A stretch of 64,000 nucleotides of DNA from positions 62,001 to 126,000 of the IMG/VR virus record IMGVR_UViG_3300028569_002417; one strand, written 5' to 3'. The notes beneath the pieces were generated by a model. The model did no database searches, was not told where the DNA came from, and saw nothing but the letters and a program-made list of their open reading frames with translations. The number at the start of each line of letters is the position of its first letter. The first letter of the stretch is position 1. The position numbers and the translations under genes are program-made. Of the stretch, positions 766 to 18,850 are shown piece by piece.

Positions 766-3639
766 ATGTTGGACTTTAGATCATGGCTTTTATTTACCGA
801 AGCACCATCTGATTACACATGGATTGAAAAAGATCCAGAAGATTACGAAACAGAACTTGCAGCTTATATGCAATCAAAACTTGGTAAATTAGGACAAGGT
901 GAAAGGCCAAGCCCCTACAAAAGAGTTATGGCTGACACCATAAAAGGTGTTATGTCTTCAGGTTCAGGTTCAGCAAAAACTAAAAAGAAGAAAAGAAAAA
1001 AGCCTGAAGGAACACCAGAAGAAAGAGCAGCAGCAAGAGAAATATCAAAAATAAAAAGTAAAGAAATAGCTCGCAATCCTCTTGTGCGATATATTAAAGA
1101 AATTGATGACGTATTCATGACTAAACTTGGACTTTTCAAAATAGAAAATGGCAAGAAAGTATTGGCAGAGAAAAGTCTCGCTGATATGATTATGAAAATT
1201 TGTCGTAAAGCTAAAGCGAATTTATTAAGGCGTGGAAAAGAAGTAGATATAGATGATATTTTTTCTGATACCATTAGCATATTGCACACGGCTCCAAAAG
1301 GAATTCTCAATGATAATAGCACCATCCCCGATAATCAGTTCCTAAAAGTAAAAGCAATGCAAAATTCTGATGGGACTTTGCCAGAAGATAAGTATGAAAA
1401 AGTAATGAGTATGGTTGGTAGCCAAGCAAAAAATTATTCTGGATATGTTGGTTGGGAAATAAGCATGTACGGAACAAGATGGAGAGATAGAAAAAATATA
1501 GAATCGCCAGACGTAATTAAATTCGAGCCAATTGCCACAGATAAAAAAACACAAAGACAAAAAGATATTGAAAGAGATGATCGCTTAGCTCTTAGATCAG
1601 GAATAGTAGGATCTCCAGCCGAGAGAATGTTAAATATTGAAAAAGATTTTCCAGACTTTTCTAAAAAGTTACTTGCCTATTTTAATGGTAAAGATTCAAA
1701 CGAGATGCTTCTTCAAATGGTTCGTAAACTTTTTGATGAAATGAAAAAAGATGCTGGAAACCAAAAGATAGTCAACCAAGATGAATTACAAAAAATTGTT
1801 GACAATGCTGAAATTTTATTCGTTGTCAAAAAAGAAGAAACTGCCGAAAGAGTCAAAGAAATTTCAAGAGTACAGCCAGAAACTTACAAATCTGAACGCC
1901 AAAAAAGATTAACTCGTAACCTTATTGGCACAAGCAGAGAGCCTTATACGAGTGTAAAAATTGGAGGAGAAGAAGAAGACGTATTTGCAGAACCTGATGA
2001 AAAGCTAGAAAAGAATGTTTTAAGTGTTATTGACGATTTAATAAATAATTCAACTGCCGAATTAACCAAGGAAAAGTGGAAAAAAATCAAAAAAGTAGCA
2101 TTTTATGTTCTTGATGCTGACCATAGATGGAACAAAAGTCAAGTTGCTGAGTTTTTAAGAACTAGTCCACCAAATGCCGAAATATATATCAAAGAAATCA
2201 GAAAAATAGCAAAAGAAGTTGCTCTTGATCCTAAAGGTCTTGGACTTAATGAGCCTCAAGAAACTGAAGAAATTATTAAAGGTGGAAAAATTCCACTAAC
2301 TCCTTTCCAAAAATCTCTTGCTGCTGGTAAACCTGATCCAAGTCTTAAAAGATTAGTTAGACACGGTGAAAAAGGTCAAAAACACTATACACTTCCCGGA
2401 GATTTTGCACAAGAAAGAAAAGGAACAACTCCTCAACAAGTGGCAAGGAGAGAAGTAAGTGATCAAGAAAAGAAAATAATGGCAGATGATACTCTTCGTA
2501 AAATAAATAAACTTTACAAACTTGATCAGGAAAGAATAAAAAAAGAACAATTGCCTTTATTCGTTGTTGATCAAAGAGTAAGCAACTATGGTGATGCTTC
2601 AGCAACTACAATTGATCCCGGTGAACAGCATAGATCAAGTGTGGCATCAATAAGATTGTGGAAAGCACAATCTGAATTGTCTTATGCCAAAGCAACACTA
2701 GAATCTTATGAAAATAAACTTAGAGAACTTGAAAAACAAGCTGGAAATTTAGATGTTAAGCTATTGAGTGATTTACGAAATAGCAGAGATGAGATGAAAA
2801 ATCAAGTAGATAAGCTTGAAAAGGAAATAAAAGAACTTAAATCGTTGACAGACAAGGAAGTTTCCGTACTAGGAAACATAAAGCGTTCTGAATTAACAGA
2901 TACAGCAGAAACACCTTTCCTTGTAAAATACGATAATGATCCAGAGGCAAGTCCATATGCTAGCAACAAGGGCATGGCAGGTAAAAAGCCTCTTGGAAGA
3001 TTGAAAGCATTGCGTGATATTTTGAACAAAGCAAATGATCCTCGTTTGGACAGCGAAGAAGTAAAGAAACACTTTAATGCTCCTTTACCTCGTGCTATGC
3101 CCGGAGAAAGGCTTCAAGCTCTTCCAGTTGGTCGTTTTACAAATCAGGGTCGTACCAGCAATGCCTATCTTACTGGCTTAAGACCAAGTCAAATTGGTAT
3201 TGATGCCGAAAAATCCTTTATGAATAAATATGTTACCGGAATGCCGGGAATGCGTCCCGGAAAAAAATATTATCCTCATCCCACAGATGATCCAAAAACA
3301 CGACTTGTTCCAGATCTGGATCATGATGTATTATGGGACACTGATTTCGATGGTTATCCCGAAATTCCCGGCAGCAGGGAATACATGAACTGGCAACAAA
3401 ATAGAAAAAGGCCAGAAGCACCAGAAGCACCAGAAGCACCAGAAGCACCACCAGAAGCACCAGAAGCGCCAGTTGGTGCTAAAAAGCGTGGTCGTCCTAG
3501 ATCAACACCAGAAATAATAGCACCAGTTATAGCACCAACTGGCGCTGCAAAGCGTGGTCGTCCTCGCAAAGTTGAATCAACTGGAAATGGATGGATTTCT
3601 TTGTCTGAGCATATGGCTAGAAGGCGTTTTGCATTCTAG
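766..3639 (+). CDS. Large Lys/Glu-rich protein with capsid-targeting-like N-terminus, HTH-like segment, coiled coil and two C-terminal AT-hooks
   Basis: N-terminus MLDFRSWLLFTEA; KKRGRPR and AKRGRPRK near the C-terminus; upstream GTAAATA. Confidence 0.6.
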   Translation: MLDFRSWLLFTEAPSDYTWIEKDPEDYETELAAYMQSKLGKLGQGERPSPYKRVMADTIKGVMSSGSGSAKTKKKKRKKPEGTPEERAAAREISKIKSKEIARNPLVRYIKEIDDVFMTKLGLFKIENGKKVLAEKSLADMIMKICRKAKANLLRRGKEVDIDDIFSDTISILHTAPKGILNDNSTIPDNQFLKVKAMQNSDGTLPEDKYEKVMSMVGSQAKNYSGYVGWEISMYGTRWRDRKNIESPDVIKFEPIATDKKTQRQKDIERDDRLALRSGIVGSPAERMLNIEKDFPDFSKKLLAYFNGKDSNEMLLQMVRKLFDEMKKDAGNQKIVNQDELQKIVDNAEILFVVKKEETAERVKEISRVQPETYKSERQKRLTRNLIGTSREPYTSVKIGGEEEDVFAEPDEKLEKNVLSVIDDLINNSTAELTKEKWKKIKKVAFYVLDADHRWNKSQVAEFLRTSPPNAEIYIKEIRKIAKEVALDPKGLGLNEPQETEEIIKGGKIPLTPFQKSLAAGKPDPSLKRLVRHGEKGQKHYTLPGDFAQERKGTTPQQVARREVSDQEKKIMADDTLRKINKLYKLDQERIKKEQLPLFVVDQRVSNYGDASATTIDPGEQHRSSVASIRLWKAQSELSYAKATLESYENKLRELEKQAGNLDVKLLSDLRNSRDEMKNQVDKLEKEIKELKSLTDKEVSVLGNIKRSELTDTAETPFLVKYDNDPEASPYASNKGMAGKKPLGRLKALRDILNKANDPRLDSEEVKKHFNAPLPRAMPGERLQALPVGRFTNQGRTSNAYLTGLRPSQIGIDAEKSFMNKYVTGMPGMRPGKKYYPHPTDDPKTRLVPDLDHDVLWDTDFDGYPEIPGSREYMNWQQNRKRPEAPEAPEAPEAPPEAPEAPVGAKKRGRPRSTPEIIAPVIAPTGAAKRGRPRKVESTGNGWISLSEHMARRRFAF
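3412..3471 (+). repeat. 9-nt coding tandem repeat (CCAGAAGCA, Pro-Glu-Ala) x6
   Basis: Read directly from the sequence. Confidence 0.95.
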
Positions 3640-4552: not shown

Positions 4553-4697
4553 AGCTTTGTCTTTTGAATAGATTTGGTTTATGAATTTTTGGGAAGTACC
4601 AAAGAGGTAATTTAGGTTTTTGAAAAGAAGTCACTGGTTCACCTGCGATATAGGGGATGAATCTTTGACTTCTTTTTTTTATTTTATAATTTTTCAT
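4536..4697 (-). CDS. Small basic hypothetical protein (53 aa)
   Basis: MKNYKIKKRSQRFIPYIAGEPV...ILEY*; its ATG overlaps the upstream stop (ATGA) and it fills the intergenic gap. Confidence 0.45.
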   Translation of the reverse strand: MKNYKIKKRSQRFIPYIAGEPVTSFQKPKLPLWYFPKIHKPNLFKRQSFILEY

Positions 4698-5524
4698 TTT
4701 TCTTTTTTCTTTGGGAAGAAAATTTTCTTTTTCGTTATTTTTCTATATTTTCTATAAGTTTCATCAGCAATACTTTGCAGGAATTGGTGTACGCCTTCTT
4801 TCCCTTTTTTAACATAAATTCTGTTTAGGATTTTATATTTGTCATCAAAGTTATTTCCTTTATTATCATACCAATCATTTTCTGTAAATTTTTTGCAGAA
4901 TGTTTGAATTGAGTCATCTAGAAGTCCTCTTGCGGATTGTTCTCCTGATGTCATTGGTTTAATTTCGTATAGAACTTTACGAGGAACTATGAGTATTTGT
5001 GCGTATGGTTCATTTTTTCTAAAAATATAAGTTTGTCCCGGCATTGGATTTTTGAAAACAACAAAAAATATTTTTGGCCACATGATTGTATTAATGTGAC
5101 CCGGTATTACTAAAGGAACGGTATAAGTTTCATCGGTATAATATCTTGGGTGAGGTTCGATACGAAGAACATATCCATCAGGAACTTCAATATCGAGGCA
5201 TGATGTCATGCCAAAATGTCCGGGTGCGAATGTTGAAAAGGGAGGCATTATGGAATTTGGCAAAATTTTATTTTCTTCTGTGAAGTCACCTATAAATTTT
5301 ACTTCACCATTAATTGTTTTAACATGAAATTCTGTATTAAAAGAATAAAGAAGTTCAAGTCCATAGGTAGATCCTTCAACAAATGGAGTGCAATGCCAAG
5401 GTTGAGGTATATCTCCATCTTTATGATCATTTGGTTCACCAGACCATCCGGGAATCTGCAATCGAATATGTTGAGGAGGCTGGCCCTGATACCAAGACCT
5501 GTATTTCAGCAGTATTTTTTCCAT
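4694..5524 (-). CDS. DUF6065-like / dUTPase-fold protein
   Basis: HCTPFVEG..YGLEL and FRKNEPYAQIL motifs. Start moved to MEKILL because the longer call overlaps the divergent gene. Confidence 0.5.
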   Translation of the reverse strand: MEKILLKYRSWYQGQPPQHIRLQIPGWSGEPNDHKDGDIPQPWHCTPFVEGSTYGLELLYSFNTEFHVKTINGEVKFIGDFTEENKILPNSIMPPFSTFAPGHFGMTSCLDIEVPDGYVLRIEPHPRYYTDETYTVPLVIPGHINTIMWPKIFFVVFKNPMPGQTYIFRKNEPYAQILIVPRKVLYEIKPMTSGEQSARGLLDDSIQTFCKKFTENDWYDNKGNNFDDKYKILNRIYVKKGKEGVHQFLQSIADETYRKYRKITKKKIFFPKKKEK

Positions 5525-5553
5525 AAACAAACCTAGATAGATGAGGAGAAAAA

Positions 5554-6537
5554 ATGAATCCAACTGGAAATCATGGTCAAAGACCTCTTGATCAATGCAA
5601 TGATGTTGGCGGCTCACAAGATCCAATCCTTGATAAAGCGCCTCCATATTGCGAACCTGATCTTAGCAATAATCTGAGAAAAATCAATGACGAAAGTATG
5701 AATTGGCTTAAAGATCAGGCCATGCAAAAGACTGGTTTCGGAGCAAGGGCTGATAGCGACCCGATGCAAAAAGGCAGGATTATCAATGATCCTGATAATC
5801 CTGATCGTACTGTTCTTTATCGTTACTCAAAATCAATTCGTGGTTCTGATGAAGCAATGCTTGATCTTTTCCGCAATGTAATTGTGATTGACGAAGACGG
5901 AAAAGGTTGGCCAATTCCAATTATGCTTGGTCCACCAGAAAAAGCTGTTGCAGCGATGATCCAAGAAAATATTCGTAAAGATGAAACACTTGTTGTGAAT
6001 AGAATTAGATTGCCGATGATGGCTTTAACACAAGGAAGTATTGAATATGATTTAAGCAGATATACTTATCACAAAGCATTGAATTTTTTCCAACAATATG
6101 ATGGATCACCGGGAACGACAATAAGCGAAAAATATAAAAAAGATACTGTTTTGGGATTTGCAAAAGGTATTCCGGTTAATATTGGATATGCTTTAACTGC
6201 TTGGACAATGTACAGAGAAGACATGAACCAAATAGTAGAGCAAATAATTACAAAATTTAGTCAAGTTGCATACATACGAGTGACTGGTGTACCGTGGGAG
6301 GTAATAGTTAAATTAGATTCAATTGCGAACAACCTGAATAATGAGCCGGGTGATCAGCAAATTAGAGTTATAAAATACGAATTTAATATGACCGTACAGA
6401 CATATATACCTCAGCCAATTGAACGTAAGAAATCTGTTCTAAAAATGAAAGTTGACTTTGTTGACGGAATTACAGATCAGGAAATTACAGAGGTTTTAGG
6501 CAGAATTGAAAAGACAGTAAAGGAATTGGAATGTTAG
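5554..6537 (+). CDS. Tail terminator / sheath stabiliser, T4 gp15-like
   Basis: LPMMAL...IEYD..R and IPVNIGY.L......DMNQIVEQI motifs; upstream of the sheath gene. Confidence 0.8.
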   Translation: MNPTGNHGQRPLDQCNDVGGSQDPILDKAPPYCEPDLSNNLRKINDESMNWLKDQAMQKTGFGARADSDPMQKGRIINDPDNPDRTVLYRYSKSIRGSDEAMLDLFRNVIVIDEDGKGWPIPIMLGPPEKAVAAMIQENIRKDETLVVNRIRLPMMALTQGSIEYDLSRYTYHKALNFFQQYDGSPGTTISEKYKKDTVLGFAKGIPVNIGYALTAWTMYREDMNQIVEQIITKFSQVAYIRVTGVPWEVIVKLDSIANNLNNEPGDQQIRVIKYEFNMTVQTYIPQPIERKKSVLKMKVDFVDGITDQEITEVLGRIEKTVKELEC

Positions 6538-6756: not shown

Positions 6757-9120
6757 ATGGCGATTCTTAAAGGTTTTCCACCATCTAATACAATCAGCCC
6801 AAGTGTTAGAATTGCTGAAAAAGACTTGAGCTTCATCGCACCTGAACAGTCAACGCATACGGCAGGATTGGTTGGATTTGCCTCTAAAGGCCCAGTCAAT
6901 CTTCCTATTGCGATTGCTACTTCACGTCAGTTGCATACAACTTTTGGCAATCCTCATCCTGATATGGGTGATCCATTCTTGATTTATGCAGCAGATCAAT
7001 ATCTCCTCGTCGCAAATACACTTTATGTAGTGCGTGTTGCAGATACCGATCCTGTTTCTGATGAGCAGGCTACAACCGCTTCAGTAGATGTTCTGGCAGC
7101 TGGATCAATTATTGAAATTGAAGCTAACGGCGAAGCCGGTCCTTACACTTTTGACGAAGATTCATTCTTCCGTTGGAAACTTAATGGTCAGCTTTCAACA
7201 AAAACACTAGTTGTTCTTGCAGATACATATACAACTGATGAACTTGTCATAGCTTTGAATGATCAGCTTGATACTATTCTTGACGGTATTGAGTTTTACG
7301 CAAATACCTCTGATGAAATTGGTGTAAAAACCGTTTGGGCCTATGGACCTAGCGCCAGCCTTGAACTGGTTTCAATTCAGAATGCAATTTACGGTGGTTC
7401 TGTAAACGATACAGATAACATTCGTGACAACCCAACTGGTTTGGGTACAGGCATGACCCGTGCTTCAGTAACAGGTTCTAATGATCGTTGGCCAATCAAT
7501 GGCTATCAGGTTTCTGGCCATTATGAATTCACAGGTCTTACCGATCAGGTAATTGAGCTTGTGGTCGATGGCACTGATAATATTTTGATTGATCAAGTTG
7601 TTCAGACAATTACAATCGCTGATGGCGCTGCTTACACAAGCATCAACGATGTTATCTCTGATATTAATGATCAGAAGGCTGAAAACGGCGGAACTCTTCC
7701 CGGTGGCTGGACAGCACTAGCCTCTGGAACACAGCTTCGCTTCGTTACTAATCATCATGGCGCTGATGCTCGTCTTCGCATCAAGCCAGCTAGCACTGAA
7801 GTTTTTGGACTTTCAACTCTTACCGTAACTGGTACAAGTCCTGAAGGTACAACTGGCTCAGTCAGCATCGAAACTTTTGGTTTGGTTAACGGTGGTGCAA
7901 ATAGCGGTGGCGATGTTTCCTTTGTTATAAACGCTGATTCACCGGGCATTGATGGTAACGTAACTCAAGTTCTTATCACTAATAGCTCTGTTGATTCAAC
8001 TTTTAACTTGGAAGTTTATGCAAATGGAGTTCAAGTTGAATCTTGGGGCAATCTGACAAAGAATGCAACAAGCCGATTCTATGTTGAAACCTATTTGGCT
8101 CTGGTATCTGATTATGTCAGACCTATAGACAACACCTTAGTTGGCGCTGGTCCTGCTAGTGGCACTTACAATCTTGCAGGCGGCTCTGACGGTATCCCCG
8201 CAGATCCTGACAAGCAAGACGTGCTTCTAATGGGCAGTCCTATTGGCTACACAGGCATTTATACTCTCAGCGAACCTGAGCAAGTAAATATTGACCTGAT
8301 TGCAGTTCCCGGTCACTCAAGCACAGCAGTTGTTCAAGAACTTCTACTGTTCTGTCGTGACTATCGTCAAGATTGTCTTGCAATCATCGACGCTCCTTTC
8401 GGTTTGACTGTTAAGGAAGTTGTTGCTTGGCAGAACGGTGCTCATCCGCTTAACAATACTCGATTTGATAGCGATTTTGGCGCACTTTACTGGCCTTGGG
8501 TTAAAATCTATGATCCATACAACAAAGTTGATGTATGGTGTCCTCCAAGCGGTTCAATCATGGCAGTTATCGCTCGTAGCGATTTTCTGGGAGCTCCTTG
8601 GTTTGCTCCAGCTGGACTTACTCGTGGTGTTGTTCCTAACATTACAGATGTCTATAGTCGTCCTACTTTGGAAGAACGTGATACGATGTACGGCAATCGC
8701 AACTGCGTAAATCCAATCATACAGTTCGCTGATGTTCAAGGTTTCGTGGTATTCGGCCAGAAAACCTTGCAGCGCACTCCTACTGCTCTTGACCGTGTTA
8801 ATGTTCGCCGTCTGATGTTTTATATCGAGAAGGCTATTCGCACCGCAAGTCGCACCTTGTTGTTCGATCCAAATGATGGAATTTTCCAGCAGAAGTTTAT
8901 AACTATCGCAGAAAATATTCTTAGTCAGGTTCAAGTTGGTCGTGGGTTGACTGCTTATATTATCAAAGCCGATGCCGAACTCAATACTGTTGATGTTATC
9001 GACCGTAATGAATTCCGTGCAAGAATTGGTGTGCAACCAACCCGTGCTGCTGAATTTATGTTCATCGAATTCTCGATTCACAGAACTGGCAGCTTTGTAG
9101 TAGGCGCTGAAACATTCTAA
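6757..9120 (+). CDS. Contractile tail sheath protein (gp18-like)
   Basis: SPSV.I.EKD, ALYWPW, PPSG, PWFAPAG, NPI, GQKT, DRVNVRRL, QPTRAAEF motifs. Confidence 0.97.
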   Translation: MAILKGFPPSNTISPSVRIAEKDLSFIAPEQSTHTAGLVGFASKGPVNLPIAIATSRQLHTTFGNPHPDMGDPFLIYAADQYLLVANTLYVVRVADTDPVSDEQATTASVDVLAAGSIIEIEANGEAGPYTFDEDSFFRWKLNGQLSTKTLVVLADTYTTDELVIALNDQLDTILDGIEFYANTSDEIGVKTVWAYGPSASLELVSIQNAIYGGSVNDTDNIRDNPTGLGTGMTRASVTGSNDRWPINGYQVSGHYEFTGLTDQVIELVVDGTDNILIDQVVQTITIADGAAYTSINDVISDINDQKAENGGTLPGGWTALASGTQLRFVTNHHGADARLRIKPASTEVFGLSTLTVTGTSPEGTTGSVSIETFGLVNGGANSGGDVSFVINADSPGIDGNVTQVLITNSSVDSTFNLEVYANGVQVESWGNLTKNATSRFYVETYLALVSDYVRPIDNTLVGAGPASGTYNLAGGSDGIPADPDKQDVLLMGSPIGYTGIYTLSEPEQVNIDLIAVPGHSSTAVVQELLLFCRDYRQDCLAIIDAPFGLTVKEVVAWQNGAHPLNNTRFDSDFGALYWPWVKIYDPYNKVDVWCPPSGSIMAVIARSDFLGAPWFAPAGLTRGVVPNITDVYSRPTLEERDTMYGNRNCVNPIIQFADVQGFVVFGQKTLQRTPTALDRVNVRRLMFYIEKAIRTASRTLLFDPNDGIFQQKFITIAENILSQVQVGRGLTAYIIKADAELNTVDVIDRNEFRARIGVQPTRAAEFMFIEFSIHRTGSFVVGAETF

Positions 9121-9151
9121 AAATTAAAGGAAGTTAAAAAAGGAGAATAAG

Positions 9152-9742
9152 ATGGCAGACATAACAAACATGGGATTAGGATCAATTGGCGGGAACAGTA
9201 TTGTTTTCAAAAGAAAGTACCGATGGACTTTCGCTGTGCGCTGGAATGGAGGAGACATTCCTACCGCATTCGTAAAAGTTGCAAACCGTCCCAATCTTAC
9301 AATTGAACAGACTGAAATTAACTATCTGCATGGTAAGATGTGGATTCCCGGTAAAGGTACTTGGGAAACACTAACTGTAAGCTACTACGATATTGGCGGT
9401 GATGATGCCAAAGGTATGAAAACCTTATGGGATTGGCTTGTTACAGTTTATAACTTCACCGATCCAGATACTCTGAAGCAGACATCAAAAAGAGGAGCTG
9501 ACGGCAACAGCACAGGTTGGGCCGCAGTTGGCAATCTTACCATGTATGATGGTACTGGTGCAGAAATGGAAAACTGGAGACTTAAGAATCTTTGGCCAGC
9601 TGCCATTAACTTCGGCGACCTTGATTACGGTTCTTCAGAAGTAGCGACACTAGATCTTACAATGAGATTTAGTGAGGCCAAATGGACTCCAAGTTGCGGT
9701 GTTCTACCACCTACTGCGACTCCAATCGGTTGCAACGGCTAA
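9152..9742 (+). CDS. Tail tube protein (gp19-like), probably major
   Basis: RP.LTIE......PGK.TWE.LTV.YYD, W.L...WP..INFGDLDY; follows the sheath gene. Confidence 0.9.
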   Translation: MADITNMGLGSIGGNSIVFKRKYRWTFAVRWNGGDIPTAFVKVANRPNLTIEQTEINYLHGKMWIPGKGTWETLTVSYYDIGGDDAKGMKTLWDWLVTVYNFTDPDTLKQTSKRGADGNSTGWAAVGNLTMYDGTGAEMENWRLKNLWPAAINFGDLDYGSSEVATLDLTMRFSEAKWTPSCGVLPPTATPIGCNG

Positions 9743-9767
9743 AATTAAAAATAAAATTTCAATTTTG

Positions 9768-9796
9768 AGCCTCGTATATAATACGAGGCTTTTTTA
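9768..9796 (+). terminator. Rho-independent terminator between the two tube genes
   Basis: AGCCTCGTAT-ATA-ATACGAGGCT perfect stem plus T-run. Confidence 0.85.
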
Positions 9797-9811
9797 TTTA
9801 TAGAGGTGTAA

Positions 9812-10321
9812 ATGGGTCAGCAAATGGGATGGGGTGATAGTTTTGGTTTAGCAGATTCTAATGCTTGCTTCAAAAGAAAAAATCGTTGGCTTTTTATGAT
9901 TCCAGACATAAGTGCAGAAGGAATCAATGCCTTACCTCCATCGAAAGCATCTAGACCTTCTCTTTCATTCAAAGAACTAAGCGTGGAACATTTGAATGAA
10001 ACAATTTATTATCCGGGAAAACCAGAATGGAAATCAATTACATTAACTCTATATGACATTTATAAGCCTCAAAACAAAATTTGGGAATGGATCAATTCAT
10101 ATTATGATGTAGAAAACGATAAATTCAAATTTGCTGTTGGATTTAAGCAACCAAGAGCGCAACTAACTTTATATGATGGAACAGGCGAAGAGATTGAAAC
10201 TTGGTTCCTTGAGTCTGTTTGGTGCCAAGACATTTCATTTGGAGACTTGGACATGGGAAGCAGTGAAGTTGTAACTGTTGATCTTATTTTAAGATATGAC
10301 AGAGCCACCTATCTATCTTAA
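9812..10321 (+). CDS. Second tail tube paralogue
   Basis: Same motifs as the first tube gene (FKRK.RW.F, PGK.EW..IT.T.YD, FGDLD.GSSEV). Confidence 0.88.
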   Translation: MGQQMGWGDSFGLADSNACFKRKNRWLFMIPDISAEGINALPPSKASRPSLSFKELSVEHLNETIYYPGKPEWKSITLTLYDIYKPQNKIWEWINSYYDVENDKFKFAVGFKQPRAQLTLYDGTGEEIETWFLESVWCQDISFGDLDMGSSEVVTVDLILRYDRATYLS

Positions 10322-10706: not shown

Positions 10707-11252
10707 TCAAAGATCACTAACAATATTGTGTCTTTTATAAAGATTTTTGCTTTTAGTTGCAGGAAGTTTTTGATCGAATTGAATTTGTATGAAATCAAGA
10801 TATTTTCTTTTCAGTTCATTATAGTTTCTTGCGGTTCGATATAATTGACGAAAATGGTTAAGTATACATGTTGTCATATAGTTAAAAGCTTTGCCTTTAT
10901 CTGGGTCGAAACGATCAATTTTTTCAAAGCATATCATAACCCCTTCTTGAACTGCATCATCTTGATCAATTAGATTAAATTTTGCATATCTCACAATATT
11001 TTCTGAAAGTGTATAAAAAGCAATGGCAAGTTGTCCTTGCACTTCTTCATATTCTGAGGAAATAATCTTAAATTCTTTTTCGGTTAAAATCCAAGAATCT
11101 GGTTTTTGAAAATTTCCTCTTTTCATGGTTCGATGTTGAGTTTCATTGATATCGTCCATAAAGAGTTGATATTTAATTCTTTCCTTTTTAGATTTCTGAA
11201 AATGTACGATCAAGGACTCAAAGGTTTTATTATTCAAATATTCAGTGGCCAT
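10707..11252 (-). CDS. Late sigma factor, T4 gp55-like
   Basis: YLNNK, DAVQEG...CF..IDRFDP.K.KAFNY.T motif; region 2 only. Confidence 0.85.
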   Translation of the reverse strand: MATEYLNNKTFESLIVHFQKSKKERIKYQLFMDDINETQHRTMKRGNFQKPDSWILTEKEFKIISSEYEEVQGQLAIAFYTLSENIVRYAKFNLIDQDDAVQEGVMICFEKIDRFDPDKGKAFNYMTTCILNHFRQLYRTARNYNELKRKYLDFIQIQFDQKLPATKSKNLYKRHNIVSDL

Positions 11253-11282
11253 TAATATCCTTTTTTTGCGTATAATACTTAT

Positions 11283-11489
11283 ATGGACCTAGCGCAAATT
11301 TTTTATTCATTGCTTGACAAACCCAATGTACCAAAATTCTATCGTGAACTCAGGTTATATTATTTAGAAAAAAACATGTTACATGAAGCATCAGCAATTG
11401 GTTTCTTATTAGAGAACAAATTTGGTAAAAATAATGAAAAGCCCACTAGCAATACACATACTGACGAAGAACAATTCTCAAACGATTGA
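11283..11489 (+). CDS. Hypothetical protein
   Basis: 68-aa ORF filling the gap before the GT2-TPR gene. Confidence 0.5.
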   Translation: MDLAQIFYSLLDKPNVPKFYRELRLYYLEKNMLHEASAIGFLLENKFGKNNEKPTSNTHTDEEQFSND

Positions 11490-12399
11490 TTCTTTGCTTT
11501 CGTCAATTGAAGAAATCAACTGTGATTTAATTGTTGGCGATCTTGGATCTTCAGATGGCACTGTGGAAAAGCTTATATCGCATAATGCAAAAATAATTAA
11601 ATATAGTTTTGGAGATGATTTTTCATTAATTAGAAATCAAATGATTGCACAGACGAAAAATCAGTGGATATTGTTTATTGAACCCTATGAAACTATTATG
11701 GCAGGATTAGACTCAATAAAAATAGCCGTTTCTGGACCTCCTGCTTCTTATAATATAGGCGTAATGCAAGGAGATATGCTTACAAGACAGACTAGGCTTT
11801 GGCATAATTCATTACAACTTAAATTCACAAATCCAGTTTTTGAAACAATTGAAGGTAAATCAAATTTCTTAAATGCATTTATTATTGTGTCAGATCACAA
11901 ATCAGAATTTGACATGATAGATATTGCTAAAAAATGGCACAATAAAAGCCCTTTATCGCCTGACCCAATTTATTACATGGCTTGTAATGAATTATTTGCC
12001 AAAAATTGGGATTCTTTTATAAATTATGCCGATTTATATTTGCACCAACAAAAAAAGCAAACCATGTCTTATTATATGACAAATTATTACTTAGCAATGG
12101 TTTATTGTTATATAAAAAAAGATTATCAAAATGCTTTGAAAAGCATATACATGTGTGTCATCAGGAATCCAACTATGGCTGAATTTTGGTGCCTTCTTGC
12201 TGATATTTTTTATGCCATGAAATTTTATGATAAAGCTTATCATTTTTACAGTAATGCAAAAATACTTGGATCACGCCGCTTACAAGAATGTGATTGGCCT
12301 ATGGAGATTTCCAAGTATCAAGATTATCCAGAAAAAATGATGAATTCTTGTCTTAAAATTTTAGAACAAACAAAAATTTATTTTAGTGAATCAGAATAG
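11434..12399 (+). CDS. GT2-like glycosyltransferase domain + TPR
   Basis: ILTKN, GDLGSSDGT, DFS..RN, followed by TPR helices; DxD position reads IEPYE. Confidence 0.75.
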   Translation: MKSPLAIHILTKNNSQTIDSLLSSIEEINCDLIVGDLGSSDGTVEKLISHNAKIIKYSFGDDFSLIRNQMIAQTKNQWILFIEPYETIMAGLDSIKIAVSGPPASYNIGVMQGDMLTRQTRLWHNSLQLKFTNPVFETIEGKSNFLNAFIIVSDHKSEFDMIDIAKKWHNKSPLSPDPIYYMACNELFAKNWDSFINYADLYLHQQKKQTMSYYMTNYYLAMVYCYIKKDYQNALKSIYMCVIRNPTMAEFWCLLADIFYAMKFYDKAYHFYSNAKILGSRRLQECDWPMEISKYQDYPEKMMNSCLKILEQTKIYFSESE

Positions 12400-13790: not shown

Positions 13791-14906
13791 ATGACAGACG
13801 AAAATTTTCGTATGAGAAGGCCGAGTACCAATGAAGCACCAGCATCAAATCAGGAGAGTAACGTGAGTAATCCACTTGATTCAGTCAATCAATTTCGTCA
13901 GCAGGCGAGCAATGAATCTTCAGGTCGTCCTAATGACATGCCAAGCGGCTTAGATATTCAAGGCAATGTTCCTCCTGCTTTTGCAGCGGCACTTGCTTCT
14001 GCAAAAGGTGGCCAGCCACAACAATCCAAGCGTGGATTTGGCACCATGAGTGCAGGAGGAGAAGCGCCTGCATATTCTCCTCCTCCTAAAAATCTTGCTT
14101 CTTCTTCTGGTCACCTGAAGGAACTTCTTGAAGGTCTTCGTGGATCGACAACGATTTACGAAGAAATTGAACTTCCATCTAAGGGCAAGTTCTACAATGG
14201 TGAAGATGGGCCAGTAAATGGCGTTGTTTCAATTCGACCAATGACCGGAGAAGAAGAACAAATTCTTGCCACTCCAAGATTTGTTAAGAAGGGTCAAGCG
14301 ATCAACATGATTTTCCAAAAGTGCCTTAAGGAAGGCATTCGACCAGAAAATCTTCTTACAATTGACCGCACTTATCTTCTCATTTATCTTCGTGGTATTT
14401 CCTATGGACCAAGCTATGATGTTGAAATCAAGTGTCCAGAGTGTGAAACAAAGTTCAGCACTAGCATTGACTTGAACAGTCTTTTTGTTGAATACACTCC
14501 AGCTGATTATGGCCCTGAACTGCGTGATGTTCTTCCAACATCCAAGCTTCCTTTCAGTTATCGACTTTCAACAGGTCGTGACGAACAGGAAATTCAGGAC
14601 CATCGTGATCGACGAATCAAGGCTTTTGGAGACACTGGTGCAGATGACACTCTTACCTATCGCACTGCTCAACTTCTAAACGATATTGATGGAATAACTG
14701 ATAAGTCAGAACTTCAAATATTGATTAAGAATCTTCCAATCAATGATGTTTCTCACATTCGCAACCTTCTCAACGAGCCACCATTCGGCGTGGATACAAA
14801 TGTAGAGATTGTTTGCCCAAGTTGCTTAGCAGATTTCAGCCTCGATCTGCCATTGGAGGCAAATTTTTTCTTCCCTCGACGCAAGAGGGCCAAGACCCAA
14901 GCATAA
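13791..14906 (+). CDS. Baseplate hub / tail assembly chaperone, T4 gp26-like
   Basis: ELPSKG, IRPMT..EE.IL, D..YLLI.LR..S.G, CPEC and CPSC, ending in ..NFF. Confidence 0.8.
   Translation: MTDENFRMRRPSTNEAPASNQESNVSNPLDSVNQFRQQASNESSGRPNDMPSGLDIQGNVPPAFAAALASAKGGQPQQSKRGFGTMSAGGEAPAYSPPPKNLASSSGHLKELLEGLRGSTTIYEEIELPSKGKFYNGEDGPVNGVVSIRPMTGEEEQILATPRFVKKGQAINMIFQKCLKEGIRPENLLTIDRTYLLIYLRGISYGPSYDVEIKCPECETKFSTSIDLNSLFVEYTPADYGPELRDVLPTSKLPFSYRLSTGRDEQEIQDHRDRRIKAFGDTGADDTLTYRTAQLLNDIDGITDKSELQILIKNLPINDVSHIRNLLNEPPFGVDTNVEIVCPSCLADFSLDLPLEANFFFPRRKRAKTQA
14861..14889 (+). other. Putative -1 programmed frameshift signal
   Basis: In-frame A AAT TTT and T TTT TTC heptamers; CCCTC-7-GAGGG hairpin 5 nt after the first heptamer. 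Confidence 0.65.
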
Positions 14907-15094
14907 CAATTTGGGAGCAATTGGCGGAAGAAATATTTTTCTTCCAATATCATATGCACTTGGATATGTCAGGTTCCATGAGCCTTCCAATCAATCTCAG
15001 AAAATGGATGATCGAAAGATTTATTCAGCAAAAAGAGAATGAAAATAAGTCCATGGAAGCACAGCAGAAGAAGGCTAGTCAAAGATCGAGGTAA
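14864..15094 (+). CDS. gp51-like ORF, probably the C-terminal extension of a frameshift fusion
   Basis: -1 frame relative to the gp26-like gene; EEIFFFQYHM......SLP...RKW pattern; no good independent start. Confidence 0.6.
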   Translation, partial: FFLPSTQEGQDPSITIWEQLAEEIFFFQYHMHLDMSGSMSLPINLRKWMIERFIQQKENENKSMEAQQKKASQRSR

Positions 15095-15097
15095 AGA

Positions 15098-15838
15098 ATG
15101 GTAAAAGAACGCTACCAGAAGCCTGTTTGTGGAGACACAGTCAATCTGCGTCTTTTCACATACAACGCTAATAGTTTGACAAATGTTGGAACAATAAATG
15201 AAGTTAAAATTTATGTCATCGATGATGCTCTTAAAGACGCATCAAATCCTGAAGGATTACGTTTAGTTCAAACAGTTTCTGGTTCTTCTGTTGAATTGGC
15301 TAAAACAGGAGAATATATTTTATCTATTTACCTTGATCCAGAAATTTATGGAATTGGTACATATTATGACTTTTGGAACGTCACATTTGAATCAGGAGAA
15401 TGTCCCAACACGGAAGTAAGAAATACATTTCAAATTGCTTCAGATCTTTGGTTTACAAGTTCCAGTCCAATAATATATGACTTTAACTTTCAATTCAGGC
15501 CAAATCGAATTAGAAAGGGATCTAAGCGTTATGTTCTTATTAAAGTGACTCCTAATGTTCCTCAAGGTGCTGATCTTGTATCTTATTATGATAATCTTGC
15601 CATAGTCTCCGACATAAGAGTATCTATGGAGATATCCTGCGGTGAATGTGTACCCGCAGAGACTGATCTCCGACTCGTCGTTGATCGGCACCTTGTGGAA
15701 TATAGGCAAGATAGCTACGCTTATTGGTTTTTAGACACAACTCAATTGGATGAAGGAATTTACAACATCTGGTTTGAAACAGTTGCTGGCGAAAACACCT
15801 ATATTTCTGAAAAATACGCTCTTCAGATTTACTCCTAA
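15098..15838 (+). CDS. Probable structural protein (beta-rich, possibly two Ig-like domains)
   Basis: GAGGT SD; repeated G.Y..W motif; follows the hub genes. Confidence 0.5.
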   Translation: MVKERYQKPVCGDTVNLRLFTYNANSLTNVGTINEVKIYVIDDALKDASNPEGLRLVQTVSGSSVELAKTGEYILSIYLDPEIYGIGTYYDFWNVTFESGECPNTEVRNTFQIASDLWFTSSSPIIYDFNFQFRPNRIRKGSKRYVLIKVTPNVPQGADLVSYYDNLAIVSDIRVSMEISCGECVPAETDLRLVVDRHLVEYRQDSYAYWFLDTTQLDEGIYNIWFETVAGENTYISEKYALQIYS

Positions 15839-15890
15839 TCATTTTTCCCATATCATCCTTGGCTGAGGGCAACCTAAACAAGGATTAGAC

Positions 15891-17531
15891 ATGAGCGTTT
15901 CATCAGCCAAGATTGATTTTTGGATCAACAACAACTACAACATCATGTTTGTTGGTCGTCACGGTGTTGGCAAAACAGCAATTATCAAAGAAGCATTTGA
16001 TCGACACCAACTTAAATGGCGTTATTTCTCTGCATCAACTATGGACCCATGGGTCGATTTCATTGGTGTTCCCCGTGAAAAGACAGAAGATGTCATGCCA
16101 GAGAGCTTCTTGACCATCCGTGAATTAGCCAAAATTAATCAGCAAATTGCAATTTCTTATGTGATGCAAAACTGGAAACTTGACGCTGATTCAGCAAATG
16201 AAGTTGTTCAACACGCATCTAAACCTGCTAGCACAACATATCTTGAATTGATTAGACCATTCAGCTTTGCCACAGGAGAAGTGGAAGCTTTATTTTTCGA
16301 TGAGTTCAACAGAAGCCCCAAAAAGATTAGAAACGCTGTAATGGAATTGATTCAATTCGGCAGCGTAAATGGTCACAAGTTTCCCAACCTTCGTTTCGTT
16401 TGGTGTGCAATTAATCCAGATGACGACGAACTACTGAAATATGATGTAGAAGTTTGTGATCCTGCACACCTTGATCGCTTTCATTGCTCCATTCCTATCC
16501 CCTATAAACCCAACGCAGAGTGGTTCCGTGAGAAATATGGTCAGAGATTTGCTGACTCAGCAATTCAGTGGTGGGATGATCTTAACGAAGAAGTGAAAAA
16601 CACTGTAAGTCCCAGAAGGCTTCAATACGCACTTGATATGTTTTCCAAAAAAGGTGACATTCGTGATGTATTGCCCACTGCCAGTAATGTAGGCAAGCTT
16701 ATTACATCTCTTAAAAACGGACCAATCACCGAACAAATTGAAGAACTAGTCAAAAACAAAGATCAAAGTGCTGCCTCTAAGTTTCTTGAAAATGAAAATA
16801 ATTTTTCAGCATCAATTAAGTTTATTGTGCAATCAGCAACTCTTCTTGAATATTTTGTTCCCTTGATGCCTCAAGAAAAGATTGCAAGTCTCATGGCAAC
16901 AGACGATAAAATATGCAATCATATTATCAAAAATATTGATAAAATTCCATCTTTTCATAAGATAAGCAAGCAAGTTATGAATGCCAATTTTGATGCTAGC
17001 TTAGTGAAAAAGATTCGTAGAGCTTTGACTGAAGATGAGAACTTAGCCAAAGCTTTTGCACAAGACGTTCTTGTAGTTCCAAAAAAATCTATCGCTCCTC
17101 ATTTCAACAAGCGTAAGATTAATTGGGACGCAGAGCTAATTCAATTGAATTCTATGGCTATCGATAGCGGCCCTCAAAGAATTGCCATTTACGAAAAAAT
17201 TGTAAAATCTATTCCAGAAAAAATAACAGCAGAAGAATCTTTGGCTACACTAAAACTTCTGAACGAAATATTTGGCAATACAGATAATGCTTCTGCAAAC
17301 AATCAAAAAGATAAATGGCTTTTTACATCAATCATGCTTGACCCAAGCTTTGATAAGCTTTTTGGAATCATTAATCATTGTCTCATTCAAATTCACAAAG
17401 AGAAGAATCTGACACTTACTGAAATTATGAATAATTACGATATGAAATCTTATGAAATTTTCAAAAAAATTGTTCAAACTGACATGAATTGGAAGATTCC
17501 TTCTGATGACTTTTCAGGAATTGCCAAATGA
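15891..17531 (+). CDS. MoxR-like AAA+ ATPase
   Basis: Walker A GRHGVGKT, Walker B LFFDEFNR, AINP, DPAHLDRF, SPR. Confidence 0.9.
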   Translation: MSVSSAKIDFWINNNYNIMFVGRHGVGKTAIIKEAFDRHQLKWRYFSASTMDPWVDFIGVPREKTEDVMPESFLTIRELAKINQQIAISYVMQNWKLDADSANEVVQHASKPASTTYLELIRPFSFATGEVEALFFDEFNRSPKKIRNAVMELIQFGSVNGHKFPNLRFVWCAINPDDDELLKYDVEVCDPAHLDRFHCSIPIPYKPNAEWFREKYGQRFADSAIQWWDDLNEEVKNTVSPRRLQYALDMFSKKGDIRDVLPTASNVGKLITSLKNGPITEQIEELVKNKDQSAASKFLENENNFSASIKFIVQSATLLEYFVPLMPQEKIASLMATDDKICNHIIKNIDKIPSFHKISKQVMNANFDASLVKKIRRALTEDENLAKAFAQDVLVVPKKSIAPHFNKRKINWDAELIQLNSMAIDSGPQRIAIYEKIVKSIPEKITAEESLATLKLLNEIFGNTDNASANNQKDKWLFTSIMLDPSFDKLFGIINHCLIQIHKEKNLTLTEIMNNYDMKSYEIFKKIVQTDMNWKIPSDDFSGIAK

Positions 17532-18850
17532 TTTCCTCGAAATATAAAATTGGAAATGAAGAGTGGCTTGAAATATCAAACTCTCTTGAGCCACACCATG
17601 CCGTCTTTTATAAAGTCTGGCAAATGGGTCGTCCTGTATTTGACGAATCAATTGACACTGCATGTGTTCAATTTGATCAAGAAGGGAAATTTATTCTCTT
17701 TAGGTTTAATCCAAAGTTTTGGAGCAGCCTAGATTTATACAATAAGCTTTTCGTTATATGTCACGAGGCTCTTCATATTGTTTTGAATCATGGCATTAGA
17801 GCAAAGGAAGCAGACTGCAATAGGCAAGCCACCAATGTTGCTATGGACATTGTGGTAAACCATACACTAACGAAAAATTTTGGTTTCTCTCGTGATAAAA
17901 TAACTGGCTCAGAAGATTATTGTTGGGTCGATACTGTTTTCAAAGATCGCAATCCTATGCCATCAAGCAACGAAATGTTTGAATTCTATTATAATCTTTT
18001 TGAAAAAGTCTATGGTCACGGTGGAATGGGAGATGGTGAAGGAGGAGGGCCTCAAACTGTTGATGATCATGAATCACTTGGATCTCAATCCGTTAATTGG
18101 GACAAAGTAATTGACCAGTTAAATGAAGGTCTTTCAGACGAAGAAAAGGAAGGACTTAAATCAACAATTAGCAAGCATTTTCAGAAAAAGAAACCACAAG
18201 ATGGCCAATCTAAAGAATCAGATAAAAATACACCAGCAGGTTCAGGTTCTGGAGGAATTTGGGTTTTTGCCGACTCTAAAAAAGCAAAGAAGCTTAAGAA
18301 ATGGGAAACTATCATTAAGCGTTGGGCCTTAAAGTTCTTCAAAGATGAGAACAAAGAATTTGAACAATGGGCAAGAATAAACAGACGCATGACCATGCTT
18401 CCAAGAAATATGATCATACCATCAGAAATGGAAATAGATGATCGCACTTACGATGAACATAAAATCAATGTTTGGTTCTTTTTAGATACATCAGGATCAT
18501 GCTGGAATCTAAAAGATAGGTTTTTTGCTGCTGCTGAATCTTTACCAGAAACAAGATTCAATGTAAGACTATTTTGCTTTGATACCAATGTGCAAGAAAC
18601 CAACTTAAAAGAAAGAAAGATATATGGAGGTGGAGGCACTTCTTTCAGCATCATTGAACAATATATTCAAAGAACTATGCAAAATGAAGATATTAAATAT
18701 CCTAACTCTGTTTGGATTTTAACAGATGGTTATGGAAATCAAGTGAAACCATTACATCCTGAAAAATGGCATTGGTTTTTAACAGAAGGTGGAGTTAAGA
18801 ATTACATTGATGAAAAATCAAATGTCTTTAGTCTTAAAGATTTTGAATAA
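17528..18850 (+). CDS. Metallopeptidase-VWA protein (DUF2201-like)
   Basis: HEALH, N.A.D..VN, MIDAS DTSGS, GGGT, LTDG. Confidence 0.9.
   Translation: MISSKYKIGNEEWLEISNSLEPHHAVFYKVWQMGRPVFDESIDTACVQFDQEGKFILFRFNPKFWSSLDLYNKLFVICHEALHIVLNHGIRAKEADCNRQATNVAMDIVVNHTLTKNFGFSRDKITGSEDYCWVDTVFKDRNPMPSSNEMFEFYYNLFEKVYGHGGMGDGEGGGPQTVDDHESLGSQSVNWDKVIDQLNEGLSDEEKEGLKSTISKHFQKKKPQDGQSKESDKNTPAGSGSGGIWVFADSKKAKKLKKWETIIKRWALKFFKDENKEFEQWARINRRMTMLPRNMIIPSEMEIDDRTYDEHKINVWFFLDTSGSCWNLKDRFFAAAESLPETRFNVRLFCFDTNVQETNLKERKIYGGGGTSFSIIEQYIQRTMQNEDIKYPNSVWILTDGYGNQVKPLHPEKWHWFLTEGGVKNYIDEKSNVFSLKDFE

What the first reader, a model, noticed from the sequence alone, without database searches (positions are those of the whole stretch)
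13791..15094. Lambda G/GT-style -1 frameshift fusing the gp26-like and gp51-like ORFs
Seen: near the end of the gp26-like gene, GCA AAT TTT TTC contains two overlapping in-frame X XXY YYZ heptamers (14861-67 and 14864-70). A CCCTC/GAGGG hairpin begins 5 nt after the first, a second CCCAA/TTGGG stem follows, and GGAGG lies just upstream. The next ORF is in the -1 frame, is open across the site, and its first ATG (14954, no SD) falls after the WEQLAEEIFFFQYH segment. A shift gives a 434-aa fusion versus 371 aa. Known: G/GT frameshifts are widespread in tail chaperones, whereas T4 26 and 51 are treated as separate genes. Inference: the gp26/gp51 pair is a G/GT equivalent in this lineage.
Basis: partly seen in the sequence, partly recalled or inferred. 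Interest (0 to 1): 0.8.

Follow-up and report, generated by a model that had tools for sequence, protein, structure and literature searches.

The report
Frameshift makes two baseplate-hub chaperone forms
A freshwater giant-phage gene of the T4 gp26/gp51 baseplate-hub family almost certainly uses a conserved slippery U-run to make a short and a long protein from one gene, the same pair that phage T4 encodes as two separate genes.

Summary
On their own they are not beyond chance in this 37% GC window. Comparison with relatives makes the case.

- **Slippery site:** among 43 distinct relatives, the only codon-invariant conserved columns are AAT-TTT-TTC. These form U_UUU_UUC at 14864-14870.
- **Phase:** the downstream ORF is in the -1 frame in 58 of 58 related loci.
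- **No own start:** the ORF evolves as coding sequence upstream of any start codon. 25 of 40 distinct sequences have no start codon before its best-conserved motif.
- **Natural fusions:** in two related contigs the gene is duplicated in tandem. One copy is short. The other carries the extension in frame; in the closer relative its junction (FF-LP) is the one the shift predicts here.
- **T4 link:** gp26 and gp51 are both PF12322 paralogues. The 74-aa extension corresponds to the extra C-terminal tail of gp51 and is not a gp51 gene.
- **Distant relatives:** the same extension sits in the -1 or +1 frame behind a T-run, often in a sheath-tube-[this gene]-tape-measure order.

The fold is unrelated to lambda G, so the G/GT likeness is analogy. 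I found no published report.

The parts
13791..14906 (+). Zero-frame ORF giving the short product (371 aa). It has a low-complexity N-terminal region of about 105 aa, then a PF12322 (T4 gp26/gp51) domain with two CxxC pairs, and ends ...LEANFFFPRRKRAKTQA.
   Evidence: Pfam PF12322 at 70.4 bits against a cut-off of 24.5, residues 125-347. phrog_150 'baseplate hub' at 7.5e-23. 23% identity to T4 gp26 over 203 aa.
14864..14870 (+). Conserved slippery heptamer U_UUU_UUC, the proposed site of the -1 shift. Both slipping tRNAs would be tRNA-Phe.
   Evidence: Invariant in all 40-43 distinct relatives. Of 136 conserved degenerate codon columns, only AAT, TTT and TTC (codons 358-360) never vary. The same heptamer sits at the same FF motif in LR756511, Atu_ph07, PA5oct, 121Q and relatives of 121Q.
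14861..14867 (+). Overlapping heptamer A_AAU_UUU. It is present here but is not the conserved one.
   Evidence: Destroyed in relatives that read GCC AAT, GCG AAT, GCA AGT or TCC GGT.
14870..15094 (+). Extension in the -1 frame: 74 codons plus a stop. It starts LPSTQEG, contains the motifs LAEEIFFFQYH and LPINLRKWMIERFIQQKE, and has a basic tail. Joined to codons 1-360 it gives the 434-aa long product.
   Evidence: In the -1 frame in 58 of 58 family loci. Codon-position entropies of 0.74 / 0.44 / 1.23 upstream of the first ATG. 233 cluster representatives in a profile search. In frame in P0027 and P0147. Predicted to form two long helices in the natural long form.
14870..14906 (+). Dual-coding overlap. 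The zero frame encodes the short form's basic tail (PRRKRAKTQA, then stop). The -1 frame encodes the linker of the long form (LPSTQEGQDPS).
   Evidence: Both translations are conserved across the family. Third positions of the -1 frame are unusually constrained here.
14873..14915 (+). They are present in this sequence but are not a conserved stimulator.
   Evidence: 63.2% of cells paired against 63.3% in shuffles, with 1 compensatory cell. Mean z of downstream folds across relatives is -0.94.
6757..10321 (+). Context: tail sheath gene (6757-9120) and two tail tube genes (9152-9742 and 9812-10321), 3.5 kb upstream on the same strand.
   Evidence: phrog_23 at 1e-76; phrog_4542 at 2e-24 and 2e-23.

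Best explanation
The gene at 13791-14906 encodes a member of the T4 gp26/gp51 baseplate-hub assembly family (PF12322).

Most ribosomes terminate at TAA 14904 and make a 371-aa short form with a conserved basic tail. A fraction of ribosomes slip back one base when they hold tRNA-Phe on UUU (P site) and UUC (A site) at U_UUU_UUC (14864-14870). Both tRNAs re-pair with UUU. Translation then continues in the -1 frame through LPSTQEG... to 15094. The result is a 434-aa long form that carries a 74-aa, two-helix C-terminal extension.

So one gene supplies the two proteins that T4 and some relatives encode as two paralogous genes: the short form corresponds to gp26, and the long form, with its tail, to gp51.

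- **Shown:** the site, the conservation of the phase, the coding character of the extension without a start of its own, and the natural in-frame and duplicated versions.
- **Inferred:** that the slip is ribosomal rather than transcriptional, its efficiency, and the function. The proposed function is assembly chaperones for the hub and tape measure, acting like lambda G/GT.
For: 1. **Synonymous-site conservation.** In 43 distinct ORFs at 50-95% protein identity, only 3 of 136 conserved degenerate columns are codon-invariant. They are the consecutive codons AAT, TTT and TTC. Family-wide TTT:TTC usage is 347:327, and the FFF motif inside the extension varies its codons freely.
2. **Phase.** The -1 ORF is open across the site in 58 of 58 loci. 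In many loci a -1-frame stop lies immediately 5' of the site, which confines the shift to that spot.
3. **Coding without a start.** The extension shows coding periodicity, with codon-position entropies of 0.74 / 0.44 / 1.23, in the stretch upstream of the window's first ATG. 25 of 40 distinct sequences have no ATG, GTG or TTG before the invariant EEIFFF motif.
4. **Natural experiment.** Contig L073 is 50-54% identical and has the same downstream gene order. It carries two tandem paralogues. The short one ends GFFFP...stop and has lost the heptamer (GGG TTC TTT TTC). The long one reads ...GFF-LPSPDSEKG... into the extension in frame, which is the predicted junction. L074 shows the same two-gene layout.
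5. **T4.** gp26 and gp51 both match PF12322 (8.8e-64 and 3.9e-52). gp51 has an extra tail of about 48 aa that aligns with the extension. hhalign gives P = 0.0026, and 1 of 300 column shuffles reaches the observed score. The order of secondary-structure elements is the same in both AlphaFold2 models.
6. **Distant relatives.** They keep T_TTT_TTC with a -1 extension, or a TTT TTT T run with a +1 extension in 78 of 78 loci of another clade.
Against: - There is no protein-level evidence.
- No conserved downstream structure or upstream Shine-Dalgarno-like stimulator was found, so efficiency cannot be argued from the sequence.
- A run of six U cannot by sequence alone exclude slippage by RNA polymerase.
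- The homology between the extension and the gp51 tail is statistically modest when taken alone.
- The only RNA data are low-depth metatranscriptome contigs.
- The natural fusions each come from a single assembled contig.
Confidence: 0.8

Rival explanations
1. Transcriptional slippage. RNA polymerase occasionally adds one U while copying the T6 run (14864-14869). A subset of mRNAs then encodes the long form in a single frame, and the ribosome does not shift.
For: The conserved element is a homopolymeric T-run. A related clade uses a T7 run with the extension in the other (+1) frame. No conserved ribosomal stimulator was found.
Against: Six T is shorter than the runs of about nine or more that give efficient slippage by bacterial RNA polymerase (my background knowledge, not tested here). 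The conserved unit fits X_XXY_YYZ exactly and in frame, including the T at the third position of the preceding codon even when that amino acid changes from N to S or G. One metatranscriptome contig spanning the site has no indel, which is weak evidence.
Confidence: 0.12
2. Two separate genes. The downstream ORF is translated on its own from TTG 14921 or ATG 14954, or by termination-reinitiation, as a peptide of 45-60 aa, which is how gene callers annotate it. No fusion protein is made.
For: Public gene calls list it as small hypothetical proteins of 40-64 aa. In 121Q an ATG overlaps the upstream stop.
Against: The called starts fall at many different profile positions. 25 of 40 relatives have no start codon before the most conserved motif, and the rest have scattered TTG or ATG codons without a Shine-Dalgarno sequence. 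Coding constraint begins at the shift site. Relatives of 121Q lack the ATG but keep the heptamer. In-frame fusions exist in nature.
Confidence: 0.04
3. Artefact or decay. A homopolymer sequencing or assembly error, or a recent frameshift mutation, has split what is really one long gene.
For: Homopolymer runs are prone to error. In-frame long forms exist elsewhere.
Against: The same arrangement is found in 43 distinct sequences from dozens of independent metagenomes and in many sequencing runs. The zero-frame tail and its stop codon are themselves conserved. The synonymous invariance is specific to the site.
Confidence: 0.02

Closest known systems
Lambda G/GT, and P2 E/E+E', programmed -1 frameshift in tail assembly chaperone genes (Xu, Hendrix & Duda 2004, seen here only as a reference cited in PMC9024508; the lambda and P2 details are my background knowledge)
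   Same: - Two products share an N-terminus.
- The slip occurs at an in-frame heptamer close to the 3' end of the upstream ORF. P2 uses a T-run (T_TTT_TTG).
- The extension is tens of residues long.
- The shift direction varies between lineages while the two-product arrangement is kept.
- In five relatives the gene sits between the tail tube and tape measure genes.
   Different: - The protein family and fold are unrelated. This is PF12322, about 250 aa with a zinc-ribbon-like domain. There is no Pfam tail-chaperone hit, and Foldseek finds no solved structure with E below 1.
- In this genome the gene is separated from the tube genes by 3.5 kb and is not followed by a recognisable tape measure gene.
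- T4 genetics assigns the family to baseplate hub assembly.
T4 gp26 and gp51 (baseplate hub assembly proteins)
   Same: - Same Pfam family, PF12322.
- The short product ends a few residues after the FF motif, like gp26 (...EFFELL, then stop).
- The long product carries a helical tail like that of gp51 (DEIFTFYQ...MIPAERGF...).
   Different: - T4 encodes the two forms as separate, divergently transcribed paralogous genes with no frameshift.
- Here a single gene makes both forms.
- The window protein has an extra low-complexity N-terminal region of about 105 aa.
E. coli dnaX tau/gamma -1 frameshift
   Same: Bacterial -1 tandem slippage that yields two functional forms of one protein in a set ratio.
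   Different: In dnaX the shifted product is the shorter one, and the shift depends on a defined upstream Shine-Dalgarno-like element and a downstream hairpin (background knowledge). No such conserved elements are found here.

Membership tests
PF12322 T4_baseplate (gp26/gp51 family) | HMM match above Pfam's gathering score | tested here: met
   70.4 bits against a cut-off of 24.5, residues 125-347. Also phrog_150 at 7.5e-23. Foldseek against BFVD finds baseplate hub subunit and hub assembly proteins down to 2.7e-17 for the related long form.
Programmed -1 ribosomal frameshift cassette | In-frame X_XXY_YYZ heptamer with the -1 ORF open across it | tested here: met
   U_UUU_UUC at 14864-14870; the -1 frame is open from 14813 to 15094.
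Programmed -1 ribosomal frameshift cassette | Heptamer and phase conserved beyond what the amino-acid sequence requires | tested here: met
   The only 3 codon-invariant columns out of 136 are at the site. The phase is -1 in 58 of 58 loci.
Programmed -1 ribosomal frameshift cassette | Downstream ORF lacks its own conserved initiation signal but is under coding selection from the site onward | tested here: met
Programmed -1 ribosomal frameshift cassette | Conserved stimulatory element (3' hairpin or pseudoknot 5-9 nt downstream, or a 5' Shine-Dalgarno-like sequence) | tested here: not met
   No covariation; paired cells equal the shuffled level. RNAalifold finds only an invariant long-range pairing. 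The GGAGG requires a GAG codon for the glutamate just before the site, which 8 of 43 sequences have.
Programmed -1 ribosomal frameshift cassette | Trans-frame protein detected | not testable with these tools
   No proteomic data are available. The natural in-frame homologue P0027 has the predicted FF-LP junction.
Lambda G/GT-type tail assembly chaperones | Sequence or structural homology to known chaperone families | tested here: not met
   No tail-chaperone family in Pfam, PHROGs or NCBIfam. No PDB match by sequence or fold.
Lambda G/GT-type tail assembly chaperones | Gene lies between the tail tube gene and the tape measure gene | tested here: inconclusive
   Met in SP-15, LIS04, HSE3, immuto and Mel-JY01. 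In the window the gene lies 3.5 kb after the tube genes, and no tape measure gene was recognised downstream.
Lambda G/GT-type tail assembly chaperones | Binds the tape measure protein and is absent from virions | not testable with these tools
   There is only indirect support. A T4 review lists gp26 and gp51 as hub assembly chaperones (PMC3004832). The GenBank record of phage Berthold names gp26, gp51 and gp28 'tape measure protein assembly chaperone'.
T4 gp51 (tested for the downstream ORF alone) | Contains the PF12322 domain | tested here: not met
   The 74-aa ORF has no PF12322 match and no BLAST similarity to gp51 (E = 11). It matches only the gp51 C-terminal tail at profile level (P = 0.0026).

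The most novel reading that the evidence does not exclude
The PF12322 (gp26/gp51) family is the functional counterpart of the lambda G/GT tail-assembly chaperone pair in T4-like, jumbo and many other myoviruses. Every lineage must make a short and a long form. It does so by a -1 shift, by a +1 shift, or by gene duplication. On this reading, T4's puzzling pair of essential hub 'catalysts', gp26 and gp51, is an anciently resolved frameshift gene.
Probability: 0.5. Interest if true: 0.8.

Novelty: new variant of a known kind. Interest (0 to 1): 0.72.

Why it matters
T4 is the reference myovirus, yet the roles of gp26 and gp51 in hub assembly are still described as uncertain (PMC3004832). No frameshifted chaperone pair of the G/GT type is recognised for T4.

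Relatives make a gp26-like form and a gp51-like form from one gene by recoding, and the gene often sits in the tube-to-tape-measure slot. This gives a concrete, testable model: two forms that share a domain and are needed in a fixed ratio.

It also has practical consequences.
- Hundreds of small 'hypothetical' ORFs in phage genomes and metagenomes would be re-annotated as frameshift extensions.
- It adds a large, independent protein family in which -1, +1 and two-gene solutions can be compared.

Tried and rejected
Pair counts on 38 sequences equal the shuffled level. Per-sequence folds show no common stem. RNAalifold gives only an invariant UUUCUUC/GAAGAAA pairing with no covariation. Rejected as conserved elements.
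2. **BLAST of the extension against T4 gp51.** Nothing found (E = 11). hhalign against single-sequence and small profiles was weak (E = 0.058 and 0.031). Only a 110-sequence profile gave P = 0.0026.
3. **One alignment of the long form plus short-form and extension fragments, for structure prediction.** MAFFT misplaced the fragments (A5), so the alignment was discarded. I used A6 without the fragments.
4. **The search for related loci with the very diverse alignment A7.** It had no usable conserved stretch, so I used single proteins instead.
5. **The search for homologous proteins on the tail region of P0027.** It found only P0027 itself.
6. **Metatranscriptome runs.** Only Logan contigs at a depth of 2-4 were available. 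One contig crosses the site without an indel. This is too thin to test RNA slippage.
7. **Literature searches.** I found no paper describing a frameshift in gp26/gp51 homologues.
8. **Search for a tape measure gene in the window.** It was inconclusive.

Full report
**1. What is in the sequence**

The window is identical to part of a 225-kb IMG/VR contig from lake water. Its nearest deposited relative is a 595-kb uncultured huge phage.

The ORF at 13791-14906 encodes 371 aa. Its residues 125-347 match Pfam PF12322 'T4_baseplate' at 70.4 bits against a cut-off of 24.5. It also matches phrog_150 'baseplate hub'.

Near its end the zero frame reads GCA AAT TTT TTC TTC CCT.

**2. Chance versus conservation**

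- The window is 37% GC.
- The 10-mer is expected 1.8 times and is found twice.
- In-frame slippery heptamers occur 4.3 times per 1000 codons.

The comparative data change this. The search for related loci returned 59 loci that encode relatives at 50-100% protein identity.
- In 58 of the 58 that reach the stop codon, the -1 frame is open from at least 46 nt upstream of the zero-frame stop to 176-197 nt beyond it. In many of them a -1-frame stop lies directly 5' of the T-run. The frames can therefore only be joined at that spot.
- Across 43 distinct nucleotide versions of the gene, 136 amino-acid columns are at least 90% conserved and have degenerate codons. Only three never vary in codon: N358 AAT (40 of 40), F359 TTT (43 of 43) and F360 TTC (43 of 43).
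- Family-wide TTT:TTC usage is 347:327. The FFF motif inside the extension switches freely between TTT and TTC.
- When residue 358 changes to Ser or Gly, its third base stays T (AGT, GGT). This keeps U_UUU_UUC intact.
- A_AAU_UUU is broken in those sequences and in the GCC AAT and GCG AAT variants.

The conserved site is therefore 14864-14870.

**3. The downstream ORF is coding but has no start of its own**

- The most conserved part of the -1 product is L-W-x-x-L-A-E-E-I-F-F-F-Q-Y-H. It lies upstream of the window's first ATG.
- In that stretch the codon-position entropies are 0.74, 0.44 and 1.23 for positions 1, 2 and 3. This is the signature of purifying selection in the -1 frame.
- 25 of 40 distinct sequences have no ATG, GTG or TTG between the T-run and the EEIFFF motif.
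- The others have scattered TTG or ATG codons at different positions, and only one has a Shine-Dalgarno-like sequence.
- A profile of the extension found 233 cluster representatives among 1.84 billion proteins. Nearly all are 32-120-aa gene calls that begin at different profile positions. The sources call them 'hypothetical protein', with no Pfam assignment. That is what is expected when gene callers pick arbitrary internal starts.

**4. Natural in-frame versions**

Two hits from that search are long proteins that carry the extension at the C-terminus of a PF12322 domain.

*P0027 and contig L073.* L073 has the same downstream genes as the window: an unknown ORF of about 245 aa, an AAA ATPase and a DUF2201 protein. 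It holds two tandem PF12322 genes that are 65% identical to each other and 50-54% identical to the window protein.
- The first gene (371 aa) ends ...GFFFPIAKRETEEK, then stop. It has lost the heptamer and reads GGG TTC TTT TTC.
- The second gene (327 aa) reads ...ETGFF-LPSPDSEKG... straight into the extension. The FF-LP junction is exactly the one predicted for the shift in the window.

*L074.* This more distant contig shows the same layout, a short gene followed by a long gene.

These are natural equivalents of 'short only' and 'long only' alleles. They indicate that both products are wanted. The conservation of the zero-frame basic tail (PRRKKxKTQA) and of its stop codon points the same way.

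**5. Relation to T4**

In T4, genes 26 and 51 are adjacent but divergent, so they cannot be fused there. Both proteins match the whole PF12322 model, at 8.8e-64 for gp26 and 3.9e-52 for gp51. Both also match phrog_150. They are paralogues.
- gp26 ends three residues after an FF motif (...EFFELL).
- gp51 continues for about 48 residues (...[20 protein letters not shown]...KMIPAERGFVLKLIEKDKQ).

This tail aligns with the extension motif for motif.

Statistically the match is modest but real.
- hhalign of a 110-sequence extension profile against 87 gp51 tails gives a score of 20.5 and P = 0.0026.
- Column-shuffled tails give 10.4 ± 2.4, and 1 of 300 shuffles reaches the observed score.

AlphaFold2 models of the natural long form (pLDDT 86.9) and of a gp51 homologue (pLDDT 90.7) have the same order of elements after the last beta-hairpin. 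That order is a short helix at the FF position, a long helix, a short helix and a long helix.

The downstream ORF is not a gp51 gene. It is the piece that turns a gp26-like protein into a gp51-like one.

**6. The wider family**

| Group | Frame of the extension | Sequence at the FF motif |
|---|---|---|
| LR756511, Atu_ph07, PA5oct, 121Q | -1 | T_TTT_TTC |
| Relatives of 121Q | -1 | T_TTT_TTC; the ATG annotated in 121Q is missing |
| SP-15, LIS04, HSE3, GXN1, Mel-JY01, the immuto phages, LR756508, L060 | +1 | varies: TTT TTT, TTC TTT C, TTT CTT T or TTT CTA T |
| 78 IMG/VR relatives of Mel-JY01 | +1 in 78 of 78 | TTT TTT T in frame in 74 of 78 |

All of these are only about 18-50% identical to the window protein or to SP-15 in the shared domain.

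In SP-15, LIS04, HSE3, immuto and Mel-JY01 the gene order is sheath, tube, this gene with its small ORF, then tape measure. That is the slot occupied by G/GT-type chaperones in other tailed phages.

In the window, the sheath gene and two tube genes lie 3.5 kb upstream on the same strand. A sigma factor gene and a glycosyltransferase gene, among other ORFs, lie in between. No tape measure gene was recognised downstream.

**7. Mechanism and rivals**

The simplest mechanism is tandem -1 slippage of two tRNA-Phe on U_UUU_UUC. Either heptamer would give the same peptide (...ANFF-LPST...).

No conserved stimulator could be found.
- The GGAGG depends on a GAG codon that only 8 of 43 sequences have.

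Efficiency is therefore unknown.

RNA polymerase slippage on the T-run cannot be excluded from the sequence. I give it about 0.12. Six T is short for this. The conserved unit also respects the codon phase. The one RNA-library contig across the site shows no indel, but that evidence is thin.

Independent initiation and sequencing artefact are both poorly compatible with sections 2-4.

**8. Known or new**

Programmed frameshifts in tail assembly genes are classical. T4 reviews call gp26 and gp51 hub assembly chaperones (PMC3004832). One GenBank record names gp26, gp51 and gp28 'tape measure protein assembly chaperone'. The functional idea is therefore not new.

I could not find two things in eight literature searches or in any of the twelve annotated phage records that I opened:
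- recognition that PF12322 genes are recoded;
- recognition that T4's 26/51 pair corresponds to the short and long products of one frameshifting gene.

The fold has no match among solved structures, so the likeness to G/GT is convergence in expression logic and not homology. I rate this a new variant of a known kind.

**9. Limits**

- There is no protein-level evidence.
- The natural fusions each rest on one assembled contig.
- The hidden Markov model used for the frame census was built from the same sequences it scored, so only the frames are independent observations, not the detections.
- The chaperone function is an inference from T4 genetics and from gene order in relatives.

Noticed in passing
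L075-L154 (IMG/VR relatives of Microcystis phage Mel-JY01); L066:2770-2790: A very abundant clade (at least 600 hits in IMG/VR) has the homologous extension in the +1 frame in 78 of 78 loci. It sits behind an almost invariant TTT TTT T GG CCT run (74 of 78 in frame). This implies a conserved +1 or -2 recoding event, or deletion of one U during transcription.
   Followed up: partly
L073:1883-3984 and L074:91-2025: Tandem duplicated PF12322 genes, one short without the extension and one long with it in frame. In L073 the short copy keeps the low-complexity N-terminal region of about 100 aa, and the long copy lacks it.
   Followed up: partly
P0151-P0242 (gp51 homologues): Precomputed annotations give gp51 homologues a second Pfam family, PF28602, beside PF12322. 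That family is not in the local Pfam copy. It presumably models the gp51 tail and could be tested against the extension.
   Followed up: no
L064, L067, L068, L065 (SP-15, LIS04, HSE3, GXN1): In Gram-positive-host phages the +1 extension follows TTT TTT C, TTT TTT A or TTC TTT CGT. The C-containing contexts resemble the UUU-pyrimidine sites reported to allow +1 slips. Only small separate ORFs, or nothing, are annotated there.
   Followed up: partly
window 14930-14944: The extension contains a second E-x-I-F-F-F motif (GAA ATA TTT TTC TTC) that echoes the E-A-N-F-F-F at the shift site, in both amino acids and nucleotides. RNAalifold pairs GAAGAAA here with the UUUCUUC at the shift site, but without covariation.
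   Followed up: partly
window 13791-14105: The N-terminal region of about 105 residues in the gp26-like protein is low-complexity (rich in Q, S, P and A). It lies outside PF12322 and is absent from T4 gp26 and gp51 and from the long paralogue P0027.
   Followed up: no
window 15098-18850: Downstream are an unknown 246-aa ORF, an AAA ATPase (phrog_1297) and a 440-aa protein with a DUF2201_N metallopeptidase-like domain. The same gene order follows the PF12322 genes in L073. The reason for this linkage to a tail gene is unknown.
   Followed up: no
window 9152-10321 and 10707-12399: There are two adjacent tail tube paralogues. A late sigma factor gene on the minus strand and a glycosyltransferase-like gene are inserted between the tube genes and the gp26-like gene.
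   Followed up: no
window 4694-5647 (-) and 49452-50030 (+): Two other ORFs have an in-frame slippery heptamer within their last 20 codons: CCCAAAG 21 nt before the stop, and AAATTTT 60 nt before the stop. This is probably chance in an AT-rich genome.
   Followed up: no
window 766-3639: A 957-aa ORF with no family match beyond a weak coiled-coil hit lies just upstream of the tail sheath stabiliser and sheath genes. It is a possible tape measure or other tail protein.
   Followed up: no
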